A stretch of 64,000 bases of DNA from Trichoplax adhaerens (GCF_000150275.1 NW_002060959.1:184371-248370); one strand, 5' to 3'; positions 1-17,600 are shown, counted from the stretch's first letter. The notes: generated by a model not told the origin, from the sequence alone. Numbers and translations are program-made.

Positions 1-1034
1 TATAATTACCAAAGAAGTAGCAGCCTTACAGCAAAATTACTTCATTAACTACCTTATGGGCGTCACCAAATGTGATGGGATGTACGCAATCTTACTCATT
101 CGAATGAATTTTAATGCTATGTTTGGATAGGGAAGTTTGACAAAAGAAATTATCGAGAGACTTTGGTACCAAAGCTGCTTGTATCAGTGTGTTTTATACT
201 GTTTCTGCTACATGATTAATGTTATCTATCAATAATTATACAATTGGTCAAATTAGGCGTAGCCATACTAGTACATTATTCAAATTCTGAATTAATCGTA
301 CAAAAAACGAAGACAGTTTTCGAAGAATCTAACAATAAATCGAAGGCATTGGCTTTTATATTTATGGCACCCATTCTACTTAAAATGATACTATCATCGT
401 AAGGAAGCCTTTCAACTTCGATTCTATTCCATAGAATTATCAAGTTCATTAGCATTTCAACAATACAAAAAGCTGGTTAGCGGTCTTAAACAATACTATT
501 AGCATATGCGTGGACTACGTAAGAACGACGTTTTTGATCCTTATTAAGAAGGCTTTATGTGATTGTTATTTATCTTATTTTATTATGGAAAGATAGTAGA
601 AACACAATTAATTGCAACTATGATTCAACAAATCCCATGAAAGACATACATTATCGAAAAGTACAACGAATTAATGCCGGAATCCAATGAATCTAATAGA
701 AGATATACATCACATAATGGTTAACAGTGTGATCATTCATTTAGTGGCCTGAGAGAAAATAATCTCATTATTGCTGTTTTCTGGTCCCAAGAGAAATATT
801 TTATCTTGTTCTACTATCATTATACTAAAAGTCTAACGATTTGGCCGACAATTTATTCTTGTCATTAATTACAGGTGGAAATAGTGGAATTTTAAACTGC
901 ACGTTTTAGGACATAACATTTCCGTTGTCAAGATCGTCAACAGAGGAAAAATATCATTTAATGTTTTCTGAAGGAGAGGTTTAAAATCGTTTTAAAATTC
1001 GCCATAAATTAGAGCTGGACACCAGTATGTGGAG

Positions 1035-2639
1035 ATGGAGTCGAAACTAATAGACGATAACTTAACAGAATATTTTCCTGAAGACATTGACTATGACGAA
1101 ACCACTTTACTTAATCGTAAAGAGCCAGAGCAGAAATCTCTTTCACCGCCATTGAATTTGGATGAATTTATTGATGAAATAGAGTTTGGATTGTTCCATT
1201 TTATTATTGTTGTTGCTAGTGGACTATGTTATTCCACGGTTAGTTTATTGACTCAAGCGGCGGGTTTAGTTATCATCGCTGCCTGCGATTTAGATACTGA
1301 TAACCATAATCAAATTTGGTGGGTCTTAAGTAATATTATTGGTACTTTAATTGGCAGTGCTATATTAGGACGATTAAGTGATGCCATAGGAAGGAGAAAA
1401 ATTCTTTTATTATCCACGTGCTTAAATTTAATTGTAACTATATTATCAGCATTCGCCTACAACTACATCTTAGTGCTTATATTTGCCATTTTTAATGGAA
1501 TTGGCTTTGGCGGTATATTTACTTCTGTTCACGCATATTGCTTAGAGTTTTTCCCACGTAAATATAGAGGCAAAGCCATTGGATGCCTAACTGCTTGTAT
1601 AATATTTGGTAGTGTCTACAGCAGTGGGATGGGCTATATCATATTGCCTCATCGATTTCACGCTCCGTTAGGAAAAATTTATTTCTCCAGCTGGCGTCTC
1701 TATCTACTGGTTTGCACATTGCCCATAATAATTAGTTTTTTACTCCTTCTTTGGGCTCCAGATAGCCTTCGATTTAGGATTAAAAGAGGAGAAATGGAAA
1801 AAGTGATACGAATTATTAATAAAATATATCGTACTAATTCTTATTGCCATCGCGATGGCCACCTGTATCGTCTGGTTACGCCTCCAGATTTAAATAAATC
1901 TCAGAGAAAAGACAATCATGATGATAAAAATATCCAATTAGCAAATGAATATAGCTTTAAATGTCATTTTTCACAAATAATCCAACGACAAACACTTTTA
2001 AAAATTATTGCTTTATCGGTTACTTGGTTTGGATATTGCTTCTGCTTTTATGGTCTATGGACAATGTTACCACTATTAATTTCATTTTATCTTAATGGTA
2101 ACACATGTTCCGGTCATTATCATAACTTTACCACGTTATTTAATAATCAGGAAAATCCGGGCCATTCGGTCTGTCTTAATAGTCAAAATCGTGCAACTTT
2201 GCTGATTTATGTTCTATTTGGAAACTTACTTTCGATACCTGTTGCTTTGATATGCGTTTTGTCAATTAATTTTATTGGTCGTAAGTGGTTATTTTCCTTT
2301 CTAGCTTTTCTTAGTAGCATTATTATATTGCTAATTTGGCTGATTGATACAGCATTGAGTACGCTGATTTTAGCTTGTTTCTTCGCTGGAGTTTTAATTA
2401 ATGGATGGATTCCACTGAAGCTCTTAAGCTCAGAATCATTCCCAACGGAATTTAGATCAACTACTTTAGGTATATTCACAATATTTGGAGGCATCGGATC
2501 GCTATGTGGAATATTTTCATTTTCATCGTTATTTAAAACCAATTGTAGCGCATCTTTCATATTATTAATAGTTAACTGCTTAGTATCAGGGCTAATGCCT
2601 ATAATATTTCGTGATACGACAGATCTTGCTATTAATTAA
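1035..2639 (+). CDS. MFS transporter, SV2/SVOP-like, single coding exon
   Basis: About 12 hydrophobic segments. Contains MFS motif A (LGRLSDAIGRRKILL), LEFFPRKYRG, SWRLYLL, PDSLRF (PESPRF-like) and ESFPTEFRSTTLG; the N-terminal IDEIEFGLFH resembles SV2/SVOP. The ORF-track start at 1029 is GTG; the first in-frame ATG is 1035. Confidence 0.9.
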   Translation: MESKLIDDNLTEYFPEDIDYDETTLLNRKEPEQKSLSPPLNLDEFIDEIEFGLFHFIIVVASGLCYSTVSLLTQAAGLVIIAACDLDTDNHNQIWWVLSNIIGTLIGSAILGRLSDAIGRRKILLLSTCLNLIVTILSAFAYNYILVLIFAIFNGIGFGGIFTSVHAYCLEFFPRKYRGKAIGCLTACIIFGSVYSSGMGYIILPHRFHAPLGKIYFSSWRLYLLVCTLPIIISFLLLLWAPDSLRFRIKRGEMEKVIRIINKIYRTNSYCHRDGHLYRLVTPPDLNKSQRKDNHDDKNIQLANEYSFKCHFSQIIQRQTLLKIIALSVTWFGYCFCFYGLWTMLPLLISFYLNGNTCSGHYHNFTTLFNNQENPGHSVCLNSQNRATLLIYVLFGNLLSIPVALICVLSINFIGRKWLFSFLAFLSSIIILLIWLIDTALSTLILACFFAGVLINGWIPLKLLSSESFPTEFRSTTLGIFTIFGGIGSLCGIFSFSSLFKTNCSASFILLIVNCLVSGLMPIIFRDTTDLAIN

Positions 2640-8780: not shown

Positions 8781-11642
8781 TAATTGCCTAATTACAGAAA
8801 CTTCTTGGTATAGTTTCATCTGTTTCATTTAACAGTAACTAATATTTGTCGTACAAAGTCATAAGAAACCTTCTGTGCACATGTTTTTGATCATGTAATA
8901 GCGTTAAGATGTAGCAAACTACATCCATTCTTTGCTATGCGATTTGCTACTTGTATTGAATTAAAGATACTTATAATATGTTATATGATTTTTAGAACTA
9001 TCCAAAAATTCACGCCTGATTTAAAATACAATTTTTTTAATTCTTAAACGAATGCATACGATTTCTTAAATTCTAAAACGAATAAATAAATACGTTATTA
9101 AATCGTTTTACAGACTAAAAGTTTTTTAAGATATAATTGTATAAATCAATGAATATCTAGTAGTCTCGTCTGTTAAAAGTACATTTATGCTTTACAAAAT
9201 ATAAATATAATATTGTGGATTACGACTAGTGTGATGAAAGAGTGTAATTATACTAACTTATTCACATTATGTGTATAAATGAATGTAACTGACAGCCATA
9301 TATGGTTCCGTTTTCGAATATTGTACTAATGTAATTTTTACTCTTGAGTAGAGTATTGTGCAGGATTTTTTGATTGTCTTCTTTGTTAGTTGTAGAGAAT
9401 TGTTGTTCTAGAGTGCAAGTCTATTATCCAGTTTATCTTAGCCTATTTCAACTATTCTTGCACGGAGAAGATAAATAGGATTCTTCTCCGACAGAAAAAC
9501 TGATATTAATTGTTACTTCTAAGATTTAGGGCCATGTCAACCATTGTTAGATTCATGGGAGATTTGCTCTACCGCATTTTAAAAACCTATTCATTGCCTG
9601 TTGAATTCTATTTCGTTCTTTCGTTTTGTCAGATTAATTTTTCTATAACTATATCATTTTCTTTTCGGTAAGAACACTGATGCACATTGAGGATATAACA
9701 TTTGGTTTAATGCATTGACGATTTTGTATTACTTTGTTTGTTTCTAAGGCACAGGCAAATTGATTTACGGTCTTAACGAGCATTTTGATGTTGCGCTATG
9801 AAAGCGAATAGTAGTACTGATCGTTTTAACAACTAGTTAGGGATCATAAAGATTCTTGATTAATCTAGACGGTTGTCATATAGCACTAAAATTGATAAGA
9901 ATTACAGTTTAGTATGTAAGATTACGTGCAAACCACCATTCGTAACAGCTACTTATTGGTAGAAGGCCTAATTTATATTTTAAAGTATTCTTTAACAAGG
10001 CATCAAGAATTACTTATCTTTGAAACACTCAATCAAAAACGGTTTGATAAAAGATGTTGTCATCAAACCATTTAATTTTGAGCATATTTTCTATAGCCAT
10101 TTATAACGTATATTGTAAAGTTTTAGCTACGAACTCTGAAAGGTCAAAATTTTTTCATATACGGATTTGTTTGAGCTACAAGCAAATATCTTTATATTAT
10201 ATTCGTGCCCGATACGAGACTCTAAGGTTATACTGAATCTACGTTACGACTGCATAGGATTAGGATATTCACTTTGCTTCCAAAAGTTTTACCTAATGTC
10301 TTATGGGAGAACTGATGTGTAAGTTTTCTATAAGTATGATAAAAAGGCCTCTTAATTTCTTTAGTTATCTCATATCGGTATCTCTATAATGTCTAAATAA
10401 GTAGTAGAGTCTATTATACTCTTCCACCCGTATAGAAATAGGATATTAACGATTCCAATCCTTCGACTTCAAGCTTGTGGGTATTACTTAACTACTCCCT
10501 GATATCGATATTTGTTAATCAAAAATTTTTCGTCATCGCTTAAGCGCTATCCTTTAACGTTATATTAATTATTCATCAGCGAACATAATGCAAAATCTTT
10601 TCTATTAATATTCTACCATATTTACTATGGTATATGATATACAGTGCGTATATATTACTGCATTTTTAGACAATCAAAGACAAAACCTTCTAAGTTAACT
10701 TTTGGGCAAGATAAATTTATTATTGTCATTATTGTTTGCTAGGCGAAAAAAATGAATCACCAAAGGAATAACGATTGCGTACGCGATTACTTTTCATATG
10801 GTCAGAAACTGAATGATAAATGTAGTCATGCATGTATGTTTGTATAACTACGTAAACCTTCAGTAATTTAGAGCATAGCGATTGTTACTATTAGGCTCAC
10901 CGCTTATTAATCTTAGCAATTAAAATTAATGCCCATACCGGACAACAAAGGAAGCTACTAAAGTAACCATTACATATTGCGATTGTAACATAGCAGATTT
11001 ATAAAGCAAACCAGCATATTCTGGTGCTAAGATAGTAGTATGATATTGCATTTAAAGTATTATTAACTTTCATAAATTATCGATATATTAAAACGAATGG
11101 CCGAGGATCTAATCCAAGGGCAATTCGAATATATTTAATGAACGGATATGGCATCGAATTGGCACCTTTATGTAATTAAATTATCCTCATAATTGAGATT
11201 AGAAGAAATGCCAAGCAAACTAATTGTGCAACAATTAAATCTTTTACATAAATAAATAAAGTGAGCGTTAGTAAAGATGATAACAGTCAAGAATTCTAAA
11301 ACGCAATATTAGACATACTAGGCCATAGCCTAAACAGTTTACATAGACATATTCTTTAAAGGCATTAAAAATTGAAGTAATAACTATTCATCATTACTGA
11401 AGTAAAAATCGTTGTTACGAAAGAAATTTCGATTTTAGCATTGGTATGCGATCGAAAGTTAATGCATTATTGAAAAATAAACGTTAACATTCTTTTAACG
11501 AATAATGTCCTGGACAACATTTCAGGTAAAGCAAATAAGCTAAAGCTTATACTTCTTCCAGAGTTGGGGATCGATTATGGCACTTTGTATGATATTTTTT
11601 AGCTGCAATAAATCTGTAGCTTCAAATCCATCAATTTTGCCT

Positions 11643-14600
11643 TTATAATAACACCACTAAAGCTGCAACAATAAGCGTTATTAATTTATAATTTCCGTAG
11701 TCGGGCCTATGAGCAGCATTAACATGAGGACTATCCAAACATTGGCTGCTGGTAATACAGATTTTTTGCGATGATATAAACGGCGTTGACCAATGCTTTG
11801 TAATTTCACCACCTGGCCGAAAGACACCACCGATCCCGAAAAAGAAGTAATGACATCCTTCTAAGCTGATATCTGTTTCTGTATCGTTAGTAGTCACATT
11901 ACGATAAAAACGAAAAGTGGCACGACCATCAATAATCGAACTACTTATTAAAAAGACATTTTGATTGTACTGAGAATCCATCTGCGCATAGTGATTGCTA
12001 GTATTAACTGTTAGATAGCGATCATAAATTGTAGGAGCATCATTTAAGAACGATGCCACGATAGCATCAGAATTATTCATATGGCGATCGTCAGATATAC
12101 CCATAGCAATCCAGCGATCAGTTCTTGATGCCATTGTTATTTCAATTCGGCCATCCTTATACACTTTCCAATTGAGTTGATTCTGACAGATACCAATATC
12201 ACAGCCAGTAATCCAACTACCGGAACAATTATCAAAGACAAGACTATCTTTTCGAGCACCAACATCGGGTGGAATATCATCTGAGCATATGCTTGGGAAG
12301 ATACAAATAATTTCCGATGTAATGCTTGGCTTTAATGGATGTTTACTTAAAATTCCAGTATCAGGATTAAAATCGCCACCAACTGCTAAGAAAAAATGGT
12401 TGCAGCCAAATAAAATAGTATCCCCTTGTGAATCACCAGTAATAATATGACGATAGAAATTGAAAGTAACTTCGCCATTAATGTTAGAACTATTGATAAG
12501 GTAAGCATCGTTGATAGCATCTACCTTTGGTGTTTTATAGCCATCAATAAAACTATCCATTAATGTTGGCGTGCTATTATAATACCAGCCAACGATAGCA
12601 TCTGTATTGGGCATTTTTTCCTGATAAGAAAAGCCAAGAGCAACCCATTTATCGGTTTTCGACTTCATTTGAAAATGAATAGTTCCGTCATTATATACAT
12701 TCCAATTCACTCGACTCTGGCAATCTCCATTAAAACATCCAGTTCTCCATTGGCCTGAGCAAGCCTTTAAAGTTAACTTTTCAAACTTTGGAGCCTTATG
12801 TTGTAAACATTGGCTACCATTGATACAAATCTTTCGACTAGTTATATGAGGTATCGTTGGGTGCTTTGATATAATTTTCGTTCCAGGATCAAAATCGCCT
12901 CCTACTCCATAAAAGAAATAATGACATCCTTGTAAACTGATGTCACTAATACGATCAGTGGTTGTTAAGTTACGAGCAAAACCCAACGTCGTGATACCGT
13001 TTATTTGAGATCCGTTAATTAAATAGACATTATCTTGAATGTCAATAATTGGTATAGTATTTATGATATATCGATCTGTTATAGTTGGCTTATTGTAAGC
13101 ATACCATCCTACTATGGCATCAGAAGCATTCATCTTTTTATCATGTGAAATACCTAATGCAATCCATTTATTGGTCTTAGACGCCATTTCAAAATGGATT
13201 GTTCCGTCACCATATATCTGCCAGGTTAATTGATTAAGACACTCACCACTACCGCATTGGGTGCTCCAACTACCTGAACATGCACTTGTATGGAGCCGTG
13301 CATCGTCGAAAAAATTCAGCGATAGTCTTCCGCGATTAGTCATGCCGTGATACTTTAACTCATCCAAATCATAATAATTATCTTGTCGTGGACTACTCTG
13401 AGAACCTGATGGGAATTGAAGAGATTGGGGCAATTTTGCATCATATGCATAAATAATATCCATAATGCTATTGGTTATGTTATGATCACTACTTTCATTA
13501 GCTACTAAATTTCGACGCCATCGCAATGTAGTGATACCATTAATTTCAATGCCGACAGCAGCTGTTAAGCTGTCACTACCTTGATAAAATGAATCCTCCC
13601 TTGGTGAACTACGATCGCGCGAATAATAATCGAATAAACGAAATAAATTACCTCGAGCACTCCCAATTACCATATCCATACAGTCCATGGAGTGATTTAC
13701 CCGTTTATCAGTCTGACTATTTGGTTGTGAGTTAATTGGTGAAATTAATAATCCTTGCGCTGCTCCAGCTGGGAAAAGTTGACACGATTGTTTTAATTCA
13801 CGTGGACGCCAACCCAATCCCAGCCAGCTCATAGTTTTAGCTTGGTGGATAACTTCAATCTCATTACTCTGGCGTATTATTTTATACCAAATTCGACTGT
13901 TTGAATCTAGTTCGGAATAAGTATGCTTTGAGACATCATCTGGCATTGCAACGGTCAATGAGGAGACTTTAGAACATTTATATCCGTAAAAACCAGGTAA
14001 ACAATAGCACTGTTTGAGTGGATAGTTATAATTTTGATTAATGATCAAGCAACGACCATTATTATTGCAATCTGCTTCATTTTGACATTCATATTGGTAC
14101 TGACAGCGTTCGCCAGTTGCAGTATTGTTAGTACAGAAACATAATGGCAAATTATTAGTACAATGATGATTTATGATGCCATCGTTATAACAGTTAAGTT
14201 CATGACATGAAAATTTAGCAATTTCAACATCAGCACAACTCCAAACAGAGTAGGGACTAGGATAAAAATTCCTATCGGCACCATAATGAATTAAGCGAAT
14301 AATACAATGTTGACAAGAAAAATCTTTAGGCAAACTAATAGTGTAATTTTGAACGATTGAGATATTTTTCGCTGGATTAGAATTGGCATTGCTATTAGGC
14401 GCCAATTCATATGCAATCGATCCATTAAGAAATAGTAGCTGAATTTTAAAATCGCCGCAATCCGATAAAGCCATATGCCATGTTACATCAACATTGGAAC
14501 CAGTTATTAGCTTAGTCTTGAAAGTTGTTTTCATGGCATTTTCTGGCATTCCACAGGGACTTTTCGTGGTAAGATTAGTTAAAAAATCGAAATCATATTG

Positions 14601-14690
14601 TCTTGCTTTCGGATAAGTTAACCGAATATGTCCATCAACTAAATACGATGTAAATGTTCCGATTACAAACAGCAAGCCGATAGCTTTCAT
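11643..14690 (-). CDS. Secreted, probably GPI-anchored protein: signal peptide, LPMO-like (His1) domain, 2 EGF-like, 4 DOMON; single exon
   Basis: Signal peptide aa 1-20 ends VDG|H. The N-terminal domain runs HIRLTYPKAR...PCG...VTW...CQHCIIRL...WSCADVEI. EGF-like Cys patterns are CFC..TGERC and CNNNGRC...CYCLPGFYGYKC. Four DOMON units carry W(L/I/V)(G/A)(L/M)G, Met-x-x-x-D-x-x-x-G and a late His. The protein ends in a hydrophobic tail (LITLIVAALVVLL) with no cytosolic part. Confidence 0.88.
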   Translation of the reverse strand: MKAIGLLFVIGTFTSYLVDGHIRLTYPKARQYDFDFLTNLTTKSPCGMPENAMKTTFKTKLITGSNVDVTWHMALSDCGDFKIQLLFLNGSIAYELAPNSNANSNPAKNISIVQNYTISLPKDFSCQHCIIRLIHYGADRNFYPSPYSVWSCADVEIAKFSCHELNCYNDGIINHHCTNNLPLCFCTNNTATGERCQYQYECQNEADCNNNGRCLIINQNYNYPLKQCYCLPGFYGYKCSKVSSLTVAMPDDVSKHTYSELDSNSRIWYKIIRQSNEIEVIHQAKTMSWLGLGWRPRELKQSCQLFPAGAAQGLLISPINSQPNSQTDKRVNHSMDCMDMVIGSARGNLFRLFDYYSRDRSSPREDSFYQGSDSLTAAVGIEINGITTLRWRRNLVANESSDHNITNSIMDIIYAYDAKLPQSLQFPSGSQSSPRQDNYYDLDELKYHGMTNRGRLSLNFFDDARLHTSACSGSWSTQCGSGECLNQLTWQIYGDGTIHFEMASKTNKWIALGISHDKKMNASDAIVGWYAYNKPTITDRYIINTIPIIDIQDNVYLINGSQINGITTLGFARNLTTTDRISDISLQGCHYFFYGVGGDFDPGTKIISKHPTIPHITSRKICINGSQCLQHKAPKFEKLTLKACSGQWRTGCFNGDCQSRVNWNVYNDGTIHFQMKSKTDKWVALGFSYQEKMPNTDAIVGWYYNSTPTLMDSFIDGYKTPKVDAINDAYLINSSNINGEVTFNFYRHIITGDSQGDTILFGCNHFFLAVGGDFNPDTGILSKHPLKPSITSEIICIFPSICSDDIPPDVGARKDSLVFDNCSGSWITGCDIGICQNQLNWKVYKDGRIEITMASRTDRWIAMGISDDRHMNNSDAIVASFLNDAPTIYDRYLTVNTSNHYAQMDSQYNQNVFLISSSIIDGRATFRFYRNVTTNDTETDISLEGCHYFFFGIGGVFRPGGEITKHWSTPFISSQKICITSSQCLDSPHVNAAHRPDYGNYKLITLIVAALVVLL

Positions 14691-17600
14691 TTTTGGCTGA
14701 CTAAAAATGAACTTATCCTTTAGTGACCAAGAATTGAAGCTTTTAAGCTTGCATCAAATTTGATAGATTAAATAAATAGAACGAGTTACTGCTTTTATTC
14801 AAACAAAGAATCTTACGTCCAACGATAGAAAATAGCATTAAATGTGTTATTTTTTTCTCATGATTTGTATTAAAACAAGGACCCCAACAGAATATACTGT
14901 AGATTGGAGACAAGTATTGAATGGTAGTTATAGTTATTCATTTTCATTTTGAATGGATTCTTATAGCTAGGCAGGCTATGTGTAGTAATCTACAGTATGT
15001 TGCACTCTATTACTTAATTTGTTCCTATTGTATTTTCAACGTTAGGATATTACTAAGTTGAAAAGAGTCAATTTTATTTACCGAGTAATATCTATAAATG
15101 AATAGAATAGAGGCAATTATCCTATTCCATACATTTTCTCTACTAGCCAGCAAGCCAAAAAAATACTCGCAAACAATGATCTTATTTATTATGATGAACA
15201 TGCATTGCCTTTACTTTTGTTGTTTTGTACCGTTATAGCCAGAACACAATAGGTCAAACAATATAGTACGGTCTACATGTAGATAAAGTATTGTAGGCGG
15301 GTAATTTCGAGGAAGAAAAAGATAGCTCTTGTTGGTTTTAATATAAAAATGTTATTAATAACTACCGTAGCGCGCTTTACTGGTGATAGAGTAATAATCT
15401 GTGGTGCGATGAATTCAATTTTAATGCTGCAAAAGCGACAAAGTAAAAATTATTGATAAAATCAGCGAATGCTGCCTTGATACGCTCGTATATTGATATC
15501 AATTAGACTCTGAAAAGTGCCTATATCAAGCTCAAATCGAATGATACTAATAGTAAATTTGCAATTTAGTTAATGCCATTAATAGTGTACATACCGTGTA
15601 GTATTTATTATCATTAATAACTTTGTTATCCAATGAAGCTATTTTAAATAATTTATTATTCTTGTTGAAAGTAACGCTATTCAGTTGATAGAAAAATATT
15701 AAAACAATACATGCTATCGGCTAACTATCAGAACTACGTATAATTTGTCGTCATTGAAAAAGATAGAGAGGGGGTAGAGTTATCCTCATCGATAAAGCGC
15801 TATATGGGTAAGAAAGAAAATAAAATCTTGCAAATGGCCTTATTGGAGAAGAATTCCTTGCAGCTAAAAAATATAACAGAGCTTTCTGAGATTTTGACAC
15901 CATTCCACTGCATTATTTTTATTGATCAGTTGACTTTATTTATCGTGACATACTATCCATAAATCAAAAAATTTAAATAAATAACACATGTAGGTAGTAA
16001 AAGAAATATGTAGGGAATTAGATAATTACTTTGTATTGGTTTCATTATAAGAAGATAAATATTGAAGTAGTTGATATCGAATATAGTAAATTATCAATAC
16101 CCAAACTAGTTTCTATACTTGTTTATATCGTAGAATTAATAAATGCATAGATTTAAAAATTTGTTTTTATCGCTGCTATTAGACCATTTCTTAGATTAGG
16201 AGTCGATTAAGTACAATTTTTTGATTATCATTAAGGTTATCGTCAAATTAAATTGATAGAATAGCGCGGTAATTATCTCTTTATTTATTAAACTTCTCAT
16301 GTTTTCAATCGGATTGACGTTACAGACGTCAAAGCTATCAAATTATGCAGCTAAAATAGCAGAAAGTATTTGGTTCTTTAATATTACTTCAACGAACTTA
16401 CTGAATTGCTGCAAATAATAGGTAGGCAATGAAACATAGTAAAATAAATTTTGTAACAAATTATTTAATTTTGCTACTTCAAAAACAGAATAATCATCTC
16501 TAAACAGTGACCTAAAGCCTATTTTCAAAGCTTACAACACTGAATTATAAATATTATCAAATTATATTACAGTAATGGAAAAGTTTGGCAAAAAAACTAT
16601 TCATGATTGAGTGAAAGGATACGTTTCAGGTAGCAAATAGTTTCCTATCCGATATTTGTTAAAATGATCTTCCTAATGTTATTTATGATCAGTACATACT
16701 CAAAGTATATAGGAAATTCATAAATGGATCATTACATTATACCTGAAATTTATTTAACTATCTTTCTACACTAATAGCTCCAGTATTCTAGGTACCAATC
16801 GAACTACTACCAATGCTTCTGTGTGACCATGCTTTTTTTCTAGGATATTATCAATTTTAAAACACAATTCCAGTCGACGGCTTGGCATTGTCTCCTTTAA
16901 GAACAATTTTCAGGCGTTGTTATACTATGACTTGTACTTGTTTACAGTGGAAGACGTCACATTAAATTTTTGTCTTCAATAAAAATAATGCATGTAAATA
17001 GACTGACAATAAAGATAATACATATGATCTTATGGATATATGAAGATTATAAAAATTAGCTTTAGGCTTTGTAATTACTTCAATACAAAAAGTAGCTAGG
17101 CCAATTATTCTTACCTGCCTTGTATCTTTTAGTGAAGTAAATTACTGAAAGTATCGTTATATTATTACAAGTCTACTCGGTAAAAATTAACCGCTTGCCG
17201 ATTTCTTAAATCTTGGTACGCTGCATTCCATCCCTGCTTAAACTCATTCAATCAATTTCCCTGCGTAAATAATTCTACATTGTACAGAACAGATAAAATA
17301 CTAATTAGTATCTGCAGGAAAAGTTTAAATGGTAATCAAGGCTAAAGTACTATATACAAAATTTACTATTATATGAGCAATTGAGTTGAATTTATTTGGG
17401 AAATATAAATTTCTAGCTGCCGTCTTCATTTTGTATAATTCTTTATTTTGGGTAGCAATATTATGATATTCATTAATTATTCAACAAAAGCAGCGATACT
17501 ATATTGATTAGTAAACTTAGCTCAAGCCTTTATTGACTTGGCTTTAATAATTCATTAATTTTTTTACTTTTCGTTGATTCCACCATTCAAATTAATAATT

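What the first reader, a model, noticed from the sequence alone, without database searches (positions are those of the whole stretch)
11643..14690. Cell-surface LPMO-like domain fused to a chain of four heme-type DOMON domains: candidate self-contained oxidative enzyme
Seen in sequence: predicted signal cleavage (VDG|H21) leaves His as mature residue 1. It is followed by a ~137-aa Cys-containing domain (H..L..P..R, PCG, VTW, CxxC.IRL, terminal SCADVEI), two EGF-like spacers, four DOMONs and a GPI-like tail. Each DOMON keeps a Met and a late His (MDCMD/KYHG, KMNASD/SKHP, KMPNTD/SKHP, HMNNSD/TKHW). Established: His1 after a signal peptide plus a terminal C-x-D-V strand typifies copper His-brace LPMO/LPMO-like folds. 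Met/His DOMONs bind heme b, and the DOMON-type cytochrome of fungal cellobiose dehydrogenase is a known LPMO electron donor. Inference: one polypeptide joins a heme electron wire to a metal site on the cell surface. In an externally digesting animal it could serve oxidative attack on algal or biofilm polysaccharide, or metal acquisition. I recall uncharacterised invertebrate proteins with a similar N-terminus but fewer DOMONs.
Basis: partly seen in the sequence, partly recalled or inferred. Interest (0 to 1): 0.85.

Follow-up and report, generated by a model that had tools for sequence, protein, structure and literature searches.

The report
LPMO-like head on four heme DOMONs
A Trichoplax cell-surface protein joins a head shaped like a copper polysaccharide oxygenase (LPMO) to four heme-type DOMON domains, but two of the three copper-site residues are replaced in this copy, so it is a diverged member of the unstudied animal 'nahoda' family rather than a ready-made oxidative enzyme.

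Summary
There is one intronless 1015-aa ORF (window 11643-14690, minus strand). It has a signal peptide ending just before His21, a 138-aa Cys-containing head, two EGF modules, four Pfam DOMONs and a GPI-type tail.

The head has the LPMO fold. The best structural match is Thermobia AA15 (Z 12.9), and a family profile hits AA15 at E 3.8e-7. It is not a reeler domain. Each DOMON keeps a Met/His pair that is present in 157 of 163 family DOMONs. The Met aligns with the heme ligand Met83 of a fungal AA8 cytochrome.

The protein belongs to a pan-metazoan family (sponge to insects) whose insect members are named 'nahoda'. No functional study was found. The LPMO_10+EGF+DOMON group was already noted in print (PMC6950343).

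The correction concerns this copy alone. The second brace histidine is Asp77 (His in 58 of 63 relatives) and the axial Phe is Val149. Three other Trichoplax paralogues keep both residues. Asp77 is real: four runs covering two organisms show it, and the orthologue has CAT where this gene has GAT. The gene remains under purifying selection and lies under contigs from RNA-seq runs.

It most likely acts as a surface multi-heme cytochrome with a remodelled head that is not a canonical LPMO site. The scan had already found the paralogues on other DNA (s1-762644, s1-769143).

The parts
14631..14690 (-). Signal peptide, aa 1-20, predicted to be cleaved after Gly20
   Evidence: It has an n/h/c-region pattern with V at -3 and G at -1. 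His follows a signal-like segment in 62 of 63 relatives. No SignalP run was possible.
14217..14630 (-). LPMO-like head, aa 21-158, with His21 as mature residue 1
   Evidence: AF2 model pLDDT 85. VIA best match is 5msz TdAA15A: Z 12.9, 136 aa aligned, rmsd 3.2, residue 1 on residue 1. The Foldseek top 50 are all LPMO or LPMO-like. A family profile hits 5msz at E 3.8e-7. LPMO_10 scores 21.0 bits against a cut-off of 23. NCBIfam SCE4755 PMO-like scores 26.6 bits against 75.
14460..14462 (-). Codon GAT = Asp77, at the position of the second His-brace histidine
   Evidence: The family has His here in 58 of 63. This column aligns with His91 of TdAA15A (PMC5823890). The orthologue has CAT. None of the four runs shows a variant here.
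14244..14246 (-). Codon for Val149, at the position of the axial Phe/Tyr
   Evidence: The family has Phe here in 53 of 63. This column aligns with Tyr184 of TdAA15A.
13956..14216 (-). Two EGF-like modules, aa 159-245
   Evidence: There are 12 Cys in aa 162-239. The family profile matches Notch and teneurin EGF structures. Relatives hit Pfam EGF_Teneurin and EGF_TEN.
13281..13955 (-). DOMON 1, aa 246-470 (Met335, His448), with an internal loop
   Evidence: It is one of the four Pfam DOMON stretches. The MDC..D and ELKYHG motifs appear in the family consensus.
12792..13280 (-). DOMON 2, aa 471-633 (Met520, His610)
   Evidence: Pfam DOMON. Met and His are invariant in alignment A3.
12273..12761 (-). 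DOMON 3, aa 644-806 (Met693, His784)
   Evidence: AF2 pLDDT 93.6. VIA scores: DBH DOMON Z 16.6, CDH cytochrome 1d7b Z 14.3, CcPDH cytochrome b 6jt6 Z 13.7. The Met aligns with 6jt6 residue 65, which is Met83, a heme ligand.
11721..12227 (-). DOMON 4, aa 822-990 (Met871, His966)
   Evidence: Pfam DOMON; alignment A3.
11646..11720 (-). GPI-type C-terminal signal, aa 991-1015 (candidate omega site N991-A-A, spacer, 13-aa hydrophobic end)
   Evidence: By inspection. The paralogues end the same way. No predictor was run.

Best explanation
The gene encodes a GPI-anchored, glycosylated surface protein of Trichoplax. It is the four-DOMON paralogue within a placozoan expansion of the pan-metazoan 'nahoda' family.

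Its C-terminal two thirds are four DOMON modules of the Met/His type. These most likely each bind one heme b, like AA8/CDH cytochromes, plant AIR12 and CYBDOM proteins. They could be reduced from outside by ascorbate or by a membrane cytochrome b561.

Its N-terminal head is a compact domain with the LPMO fold, related to AA15 and AA10. In most family members the head carries a full copper His-brace (His1, His57, axial Phe129 in mature numbering). In this copy the site is remodelled to His1/Asp57/Val129, with an extra Cys58 and changed second-shell residues. The head is therefore probably not a canonical oxygen- or peroxide-activating copper centre.

Most likely the protein works as a surface electron-transfer (cytochrome) module. 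Its head would act as an altered metal-binding or ligand-binding domain. It might also hand electrons in trans to acceptors such as the intact His-brace paralogues or metal ions.

Shown here: the architecture, both folds, residue conservation, the reality of Asp77, and purifying selection. Inferred: heme binding, the electron source, the acceptor, and loss of LPMO chemistry.
For: - Architecture.
- LPMO fold of the head: family profile hits TdAA15A at E 3.8e-7, with family His57 on His91 and Phe129 on Tyr184. Foldseek returns only LPMOs. VIA Z is 12.9 over 136 of 145 residues.
- Altered site: Asp57, Val129, G60D, E119D, W120R and R115H. That is 8 mismatches in 35 conserved columns, against 0-2 for most relatives. 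Only 5 of 62 relatives lack His57.
- Not an error: there is no variant at 14460-14462 in four runs covering two coded organisms, and the orthologue codon is CAT against GAT here.
- Not a pseudogene: the ORF is intact. NG86 omega is 0.23 for the head and 0.11-0.13 for the other domains. An in-frame 3-nt indel separates the two organisms, and contigs from RNA-seq runs cover 11500-14708 but not 14719-14800.
- Heme-type DOMONs: Met is present in 236 of 238 family DOMONs and the Met+His pair in 157 of 163. The Met aligns with the axial ligand Met83 of the CcPDH cytochrome, where DBH has Leu. The motif S-x-D-x-x-M resembles the CYBDOM heme motif (PMC10691727). For the DOMON3 model, 8 of the top 10 structural matches are heme-b cytochromes. 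Relatives P0041 and P0017 exceed the Pfam CDH-cyt cut-off.
- Possible partners: cytochrome b561 genes exist in the genome, and the Mesostigma relative P0084 has head + 2 DOMON + b561 in one chain.
Against: - No cofactor was measured.
- The best structural and sequence match of the DOMONs is the heme-free DOMON of dopamine beta-hydroxylase.
- The window protein itself gives no Pfam CDH-cyt hit.
- His1, His72 (conserved in 40 of 63) and Asp77 might still form a working copper site. X325/Bim1 proteins use an Asp as an extra copper ligand.
- The head's overall divergence matches that of the orthologue, which keeps His57: the tip branches are 0.29 and 0.30. 'Decay' is therefore confined to the site.
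- DNA carry-over in the RNA runs cannot be excluded for an intronless gene.
Confidence: 0.6

Rival explanations
1. The protein is a working, self-contained LPMO. The four hemes deliver electrons to a copper ion held by His21 and neighbouring ligands (Asp77 and/or His72), and it oxidises food or biofilm polysaccharide at the cell surface.
For: It has the LPMO fold with His1 after the signal peptide. Heme-type DOMONs sit in the same chain. CDH-type cytochromes are known LPMO donors (PMC13575373 abstract). The head is still under purifying selection, omega 0.23. The family-level fusion to b561 also fits.
Against: The second brace His and the axial aromatic residue are both replaced, together with the conserved GG and E-W motifs. 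No characterised LPMO known to me lacks the second His. The copy falls below the LPMO_10 cut-off, unlike its three paralogues. No chitin synthase was found in the genome, so any substrate would have to come from outside.
Confidence: 0.12
2. It is a metal-handling protein. The head captures Cu(II) or Fe(III) at a His/Asp(/Cys) site and the DOMON hemes reduce the metal for uptake. This would parallel Bim1/X325 (GPI-anchored LPMO-like copper acquisition) combined with SDR2/CG8399-type DOMON reductases.
For: It has a GPI-type tail like X325/Bim1. There are weak BIM1-like Pfam hits: 17.1 bits here and 21.9 bits in P0084. X325 appears among the structural matches at Z 9.7-9.9. CYBDOM DOMONs have been proposed as the site of ferric reduction (PMC10691727). 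Asp and Cys are harder or different ligands that could suit capturing a metal rather than activating O2.
Against: BIM1-like scores are below the cut-off of 27. AA15 and AA10 structures match better than X325. No metal transporter is linked to the gene; the only neighbouring large ORF is an MFS/sugar-type transporter 9 kb away. There are no data on metal binding.
Confidence: 0.15
3. It is a non-redox matrix or adhesion protein. The DOMONs bind sugar or nothing, as in DBH and some bacterial DOMONs. The head is a carbohydrate-binding or protein-binding module.
For: The best DOMON match is the heme-free DBH DOMON at Z 16.6. EGF modules, many N-glycosylation sequons (19) and a GPI tail are typical of adhesion proteins. 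The number of DOMONs varies from 2 to 7 among relatives.
Against: The Met/His pair is kept in 96% of family DOMONs and DBH lacks it. Family members pass the CDH-cyt cut-off. The fusion to cytochrome b561 in P0084 is hard to explain without redox function.
Confidence: 0.12

Closest known systems
Insect/arthropod 'DOMON-like domain-containing protein nahoda' and its metazoan homologues (uncharacterised)
   Same: They share the order signal peptide, His1 LPMO-like head, EGF modules, then DOMONs. E-values are 1e-19 to 1e-34 against the first 240 aa. The family is found from sponge to hemichordate and arthropods.
   Different: The bilaterian proteins have 2-3 DOMONs followed by a SEA domain, a transmembrane helix and a cytoplasmic tail. 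This one has four DOMONs and a GPI-type end, and it lacks His57 and Phe129.
AA15 LPMO (Thermobia domestica TdAA15A, PDB 5msz) and AA10 LPMOs
   Same: The fold is shared (Z 12.9 and 11-12). Both have an N-terminal His after the signal peptide and the C-A-D-[VI] last strand, and there is a profile match at E 3.8e-7.
   Different: The head is about 138 aa against about 195 aa, with about 20% identity. It has Asp in place of His91 and Val in place of Tyr184. It is below the Pfam LPMO_10 cut-off. No activity is known.
AA8 cytochrome domains of cellobiose dehydrogenase and CcPDH; plant AIR12; CYBDOM (SDR2/CG8399) DOMONs
   Same: They share the beta-sandwich DOMON fold (Z 13.7-14.3). The Met aligns with the heme ligand Met83 of CcPDH, there is a conserved late His, and the motif is S-x-D-x-x-M. 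From my own knowledge, not checked here: AIR12 is likewise GPI-anchored and extracellular.
   Different: Here four modules stand in tandem with no flavin, PQQ or b561 domain in the chain. The sequence is closer to the heme-free DBH DOMON (E 6e-6) than to AA8 (E 0.05).
X325 / Bim1 LPMO-like copper proteins of fungi
   Same: Both are GPI-anchored LPMO-fold proteins that are not polysaccharide oxidases, and Asp takes part in the metal site. X325 is a structural match at Z 9.7-9.9.
   Different: X325 keeps both brace histidines and adds the Asp. The BIM1-like Pfam score here is only 17 bits against a cut-off of 27. X325 has no DOMONs.
Bacterial SCE4755 family 'polysaccharide monooxygenase-like' proteins (NCBIfam NF043005)
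   Same: They are similarly compact (146 positions) and are matched almost end to end by family heads at 25-50 bits. They are also the nearest feature-based clusters.
   Different: All scores are below the 75-bit cut-off. They are single-domain bacterial proteins of unknown function.

Membership tests
LPMO (AA10/AA15-type copper His-brace enzymes) | N-terminal His as mature residue 1 after a signal peptide | tested here: met
   His21 follows VDG. The aligned His follows a signal-like segment in 62 of 63 relatives. Model residue 1 aligns with residue 1 of 5msz. No SignalP run was possible.
LPMO (AA10/AA15-type copper His-brace enzymes) | Second brace histidine (His91 in TdAA15A) | tested here: not met
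   This position is Asp77 (codon GAT). The family has His in 58 of 63.
LPMO (AA10/AA15-type copper His-brace enzymes) | Axial Tyr/Phe (Tyr184 in TdAA15A) | tested here: not met
   This position is Val149. The family has Phe in 53 of 63.
LPMO (AA10/AA15-type copper His-brace enzymes) | LPMO beta-sandwich fold | tested here: met
   The Foldseek top 50 are all LPMO or LPMO-like. VIA Z is 12.9 to 5msz and 11-12 to AA10 structures.
LPMO (AA10/AA15-type copper His-brace enzymes) | Pfam LPMO_10 score over the gathering cut-off (23 bits) | tested here: not met
   The window head scores 21.0 bits and is absent from the own-genome PF03067 hits. The three paralogues score 26.6-29.3 bits.
LPMO (AA10/AA15-type copper His-brace enzymes) | Copper binding and oxidative cleavage of a polysaccharide | not testable with these tools
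   This needs protein expression, EPR or ICP-MS, and product analysis.
Heme-b DOMON cytochromes (AA8 / AIR12 / CYBDOM type) | DOMON beta-sandwich fold | tested here: met
   Pfam DOMON E 4.4e-76 with four stretches. The DOMON3 model scores Z 14.3 to 1d7b and 13.7 to 6jt6.
Heme-b DOMON cytochromes (AA8 / AIR12 / CYBDOM type) | Axial Met at the position of CDH Met65 / CcPDH Met83 | tested here: met
   The HMMER alignment puts the DOMON Met on 6jt6 residue 65, which is Met83. That alignment is weak (E 0.05). The Met is present in 236 of 238 family DOMONs.
Heme-b DOMON cytochromes (AA8 / AIR12 / CYBDOM type) | Axial His near the C-terminal end (CDH His163 / CcPDH His182) | tested here: inconclusive
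   A late His is invariant in all four DOMONs and paired with the Met in 157 of 163 family DOMONs. The Met-His spacing is 90-113 residues against 99 in CcPDH. No residue-level alignment to a solved heme ligand was obtained.
Heme-b DOMON cytochromes (AA8 / AIR12 / CYBDOM type) | Pfam CDH-cyt over cut-off (27 bits) | tested here: not met
   The window protein gives no hit. The orthologue P0002 scores 25 bits. Relatives P0041 (47.7) and P0017 (40) pass.
Heme-b DOMON cytochromes (AA8 / AIR12 / CYBDOM type) | Heme b bound and reducible | not testable with these tools
   This needs UV-visible spectra of the protein.
nahoda family (metazoan LPMO-like + EGF + DOMON surface proteins) | Homologous head + EGF + DOMON in this order | tested here: met
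   In the tree the placozoan copies are monophyletic, with the other animals on the other side of the split (both forks 100/100; root at the midpoint only).
nahoda family (metazoan LPMO-like + EGF + DOMON surface proteins) | SEA domain, transmembrane helix and cytoplasmic tail, as in the bilaterian members | tested here: not met
   There is no SEA hit. The protein ends in a 13-aa hydrophobic stretch.
GPI-anchored proteins | N-terminal signal peptide plus C-terminal omega site, spacer and hydrophobic end without a cytoplasmic extension | tested here: inconclusive
   The pattern is present by inspection (N991-A-A, 9-aa spacer, 13 hydrophobic residues). No GPI predictor was available and there is no experiment.
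X325/Bim1 copper acquisition proteins | Pfam BIM1-like_dom over cut-off (27 bits) | tested here: not met
   17.1 bits.

The most novel reading that the evidence does not exclude
The nahoda family, including this protein, would be an animal extracellular redox machine in which built-in heme-b DOMON modules feed a metal centre in an LPMO-fold head. That would make it the first LPMO-type protein to carry its own electron donor in Metazoa. This Trichoplax copy would have evolved a new His/Asp(/Cys) metal site that does different chemistry, such as metal reduction or peroxide handling, rather than being a dead head.
Probability: 0.15. Interest if true: 0.8.

Novelty: new variant of a known kind. 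Interest (0 to 1): 0.5.

Why it matters
LPMOs need an outside electron donor. Fungi supply one with the DOMON-type cytochrome of cellobiose dehydrogenase. A conserved animal family, from sponge to Drosophila nahoda, places an LPMO-fold head and heme-type DOMONs in one surface protein. In one alga the same chain also carries cytochrome b561. Together these suggest a complete path from cytosolic ascorbate to an extracellular metal site. No one appears to have studied this family.

Trichoplax offers a natural comparison set. Three paralogues keep an intact His-brace, and this one has His changed to Asp and Phe changed to Val while all heme ligands are kept. Comparing them would show what the head does and whether the DOMON chain has a role of its own.

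For this gene alone, the result is more sober. It is the family member least likely to be an active LPMO.

Tried and rejected
- **Reeler or another fold for the head:** rejected. Every strong structural match is an LPMO.
- **Asp77 as an assembly or sequencing error:** rejected. Four runs covering two coded organisms show no variant at 14460-14462.
- **Pseudogene:** rejected. The ORF is intact, omega is 0.11-0.23, the indel between organisms is in frame, and contigs from RNA runs cover the gene.
- **Faster overall evolution of this copy's head:** not seen. Its tip branch equals that of the orthologue, and head identity is 63% against 69-73% for the other domains.
- **Single-sequence search of the head against PDB sequences:** found nothing. 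The family profile was needed.
- **One wrong-frame reference:** one search failed and was corrected.
- **Literature:** 'nahoda' appears only in gene lists. A search for 'CG12781', a fly gene number I recalled from memory for nahoda, returned only two unrelated human-methylation papers, and 'CYBDOM'+'LPMO' found nothing. The abalone shell paper concerns a reeler-DOMON protein, not this family.
- **Endogenous chitin as substrate:** no chitin synthase match in the genome. This is weak negative evidence.
- **Residue-level structural check of the heme pocket and of His72 near His21:** not possible, because model coordinates are not exposed.
Full report
**What is there.** Window 11643-14690 (minus strand) is a single uninterrupted ORF of 1015 aa. 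Pfam finds four DOMON stretches (E 4.4e-76). Aa 159-245 carry twelve Cys in two EGF-like modules, and a family profile matches Notch and teneurin EGF structures there. The C-terminus reads N991-A-A, then nine polar residues, then thirteen hydrophobic residues, then the stop. That is a GPI-type signal by inspection. There are 19 N-glycosylation sequons.

**The head is an LPMO-fold domain.**
- On its own it gives no hit against PDB sequences and only sub-threshold family hits: LPMO_10 21.0 bits against 23, BIM1-like 17.1 against 27, and NCBIfam SCE4755 'PMO-like' 26.6 against 75.
- An exhaustive search found 226 representative clusters at E<=1e-3.
- In 62 of the 63 relatives that cover the whole domain, the aligned His comes directly after a signal-like segment.
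- A profile of 21 relatives hits Thermobia domestica AA15 (5msz) as the best PDB sequence, at E 3.8e-7.
- An AlphaFold2 model built on 62 sequences (pLDDT 85) matches only LPMO and LPMO-like structures in Foldseek.
- With VIA-align, 5msz is best (Z 12.9, 136 residues, rmsd 3.2, residue 1 on residue 1), followed by AA10, AA16, AA11, AA13, X325 and AA9.

**The correction: this copy has lost the canonical brace.** In the profile alignment the family's 'PH.GG' His falls on His91 of TdAA15A, and the Phe of 'F-W-S-C-A-D' falls on Tyr184. Together with His1, these are the published brace and axial residues (PMC5823890).

| Position (mature numbering) | Family (63 relatives) | Window protein |
|---|---|---|
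| His1 | 62 | His21 |
| His57 | 58 | Asp77 |
| Phe129 | 53 | Val149 |

- The window protein also has G60D, R115H, A117G, E119D and W120R, and an extra fifth Cys (Cys78) next to Asp77.
- It mismatches 8 of 35 conserved columns, where most relatives mismatch 0-2.
- Only 5 of 62 relatives lack His57.
- The genome holds three further paralogues on contig C1392, with 3, 2 and 2 DOMONs. All keep His57. Position 129 is Phe in two of them and Tyr in 61435. All pass the LPMO_10 cut-off, whereas the window copy is not hit at all.

**Asp77 is real and the gene is alive.**
- Contigs of four public runs, covering two coded organisms and including a DNA contig that spans the whole stretch, show no difference at 14460-14462.
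- The closest orthologue (P0002, 1013 aa, four DOMONs, Logan run SRR30664517) has CAT where the window has GAT.
- In a tree, the placozoan copies form one clade (100/100). The window copy and P0002 are sisters (100/100) on a long stem, with equal tips of 0.29 and 0.30. The His-to-Asp change therefore arose after that split and without general acceleration.
- NG86 omega against P0002 is 0.23 for the head and 0.11-0.13 for the EGF and DOMON parts. dS is 1.0-1.8, which is near saturation, so these are rough values.
- The two organisms differ by a few substitutions and one in-frame TTA insertion.
- Contigs from two runs recorded as RNA-seq cover 11500-14708 in pieces and stop about 18 nt upstream of the ATG, with nothing at 14719-14800. 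This fits transcription. DNA carry-over cannot be excluded for an intronless gene, and I could not lay a control stretch.

**The DOMONs look like cytochromes.**
- An alignment of six placozoan DOMONs keeps one Met and one late His invariant.
- Among 240 DOMON matches in all collected relatives, Met is present in 236 of 238, and the Met+His pair in 157 of 163 that span both columns.
- Against PDB sequences the best hit is the heme-free DOMON of dopamine beta-hydroxylase (E 6e-6), which has Leu at the Met column.
- The next hit is the cytochrome b domain of Coprinopsis PDH (6jt6, E 0.05), where the DOMON Met falls on chain residue 65. That residue is Met83, the axial heme ligand, paired with His182 (PMC6881789).
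- The local motif S-x-D-x-x-M resembles the 'SXDXXMGXD' heme motif described for CYBDOM DOMONs. In those, the Met and His align with the CDH ligands and are absent from DBH (PMC10691727).
- A model of DOMON3 (pLDDT 93.6) matches DBH DOMON (Z 16.6), CDH cytochromes (14.3-13.1), the CcPDH cytochrome (13.7), and the heme-b subunits of ethylbenzene dehydrogenase and nitrite oxidoreductase (11.1, 10.4). All else scores below 7.
- Relatives P0041 (seven DOMONs) and P0017 exceed the Pfam CDH-cyt cut-off. The window protein itself does not reach it.
- Heme binding is thus well supported by inference but not shown. The His ligand in particular rests on conservation and spacing only.

**Family and prior knowledge.**
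- Full-length relatives occur in sponge, placozoans, hemichordate, echinoderms, a tunicate, annelid, molluscs, priapulid, nematomorph, chelicerates, crustaceans and insects.
- NCBI names the insect proteins 'DOMON-like domain-containing protein nahoda'. UniProt labels some as 'Chitin-binding type-4 domain-containing'.
- Bilaterian members add SEA, a transmembrane helix and a cytoplasmic tail. The placozoan ones end in GPI-type tails.
- In the papers I could search, nahoda appears only in gene lists.
[quoted passage not shown] The architecture is therefore known to exist but is uncharacterised.
- One relative labelled Mesostigma viride (P0084) has head + 2 DOMON + cytochrome b561 in one chain, with b561 at 33.7 bits against a cut-off of 23. 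This is the strongest comparative hint that the head is served by a transmembrane electron chain.
- The Trichoplax genome has several b561 loci and no detectable chitin synthase.

**Most likely mechanism.**
- Shown: a secreted, probably GPI-anchored protein with an LPMO-fold head, an EGF stalk and four DOMONs that keep the heme-ligand pair, and a head site remodelled to His/Asp/Val.
- Inferred: each DOMON binds heme b and is reduced by ascorbate or a b561 partner. In canonical family members electrons reach a copper His-brace. In this copy the carboxylate ligand and the missing axial aromatic residue make a Cu(I)/Cu(II) oxygen-activating centre unlikely.
- The protein would then act mainly as a surface cytochrome whose head binds a different metal or ligand, or as a relay for other acceptors such as the intact paralogues or metal ions.
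- The varying number of DOMONs (2-7) argues against a precisely built four-step wire and for modular electron-accepting units. This too is inference.
- I put about 0.6 on this composite reading, 0.12 on a working LPMO, 0.15 on metal capture and reduction, and 0.12 on a non-redox adhesion role.

**Earlier scan notes.**
- The scan had already reported the paralogues on other DNA (s1-762644, s1-769143), and a follow-up agent gave the same family reading. I reached nahoda and the paralogues independently before reading those notes.

**Verdict.** This is a diverged variant, with an altered brace, four DOMONs and a GPI tail, of a known but unstudied kind. At family level it is of moderate to high interest. 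This copy is the least likely of the four to be an active LPMO, but it is useful as a natural mutant for comparison.

Noticed in passing
L008:1985-3328 (-) = G000:C1408 around 4191484-4192827: This is a fifth LPMO_10-like gene in the same genome (26.7 bits, over the cut-off). It is an intronless 447-aa ORF with His directly after a signal-like segment and a last strand reading C-S-D-V. It is followed by about 280 aa with no Pfam match and has no DOMON. It may be a different uncharacterised LPMO-like family.
   Followed up: partly
P0084 (905 aa, labelled Mesostigma viride in EukProt): The LPMO-like head (His1 and His57 kept), two DOMONs and a cytochrome b561 domain sit in one chain. This would be a head-CYBDOM fusion in a green alga, if the record is not contamination or a chimeric gene model.
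   Followed up: partly
window 1029-2639 (+): A 536-aa ORF matches Pfam MFS_1 (E 9e-32) and Sugar_tr (E 3e-25). It is the only other large ORF in the first 27 kb of the window.
   Followed up: partly
window 14457-14459 (-): Cys78 lies next to Asp77 and is a fifth, unpaired Cys in the head. The family has four conserved Cys there. It could be a free thiol near the altered metal site.
   Followed up: no
window 13704 and 14488: The second coded organism (B) carries an in-frame TTA insertion after 13704, seen in a DNA contig and in one of its two RNA-run contigs. It also carries a T>A change at 14488, in codon 68 of the head. Both keep the reading frame.
   Followed up: no
L005:2365-5043 (+) and L006:2968-5298 (-): The paralogues carry long acidic Pro/Glu/Gly/Asn/Ala-rich repeats inside DOMON 1, which the window copy lacks. 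The three full paralogous ORFs read here (the window copy and these two) are single uninterrupted ORFs, and so is the fifth gene (L008).
   Followed up: no
P0041 (2184 aa, Logan contig): This relative has seven DOMONs after the head and EGF part, then a SEA domain and a transmembrane region. It is the largest DOMON array seen in the family here.
   Followed up: no
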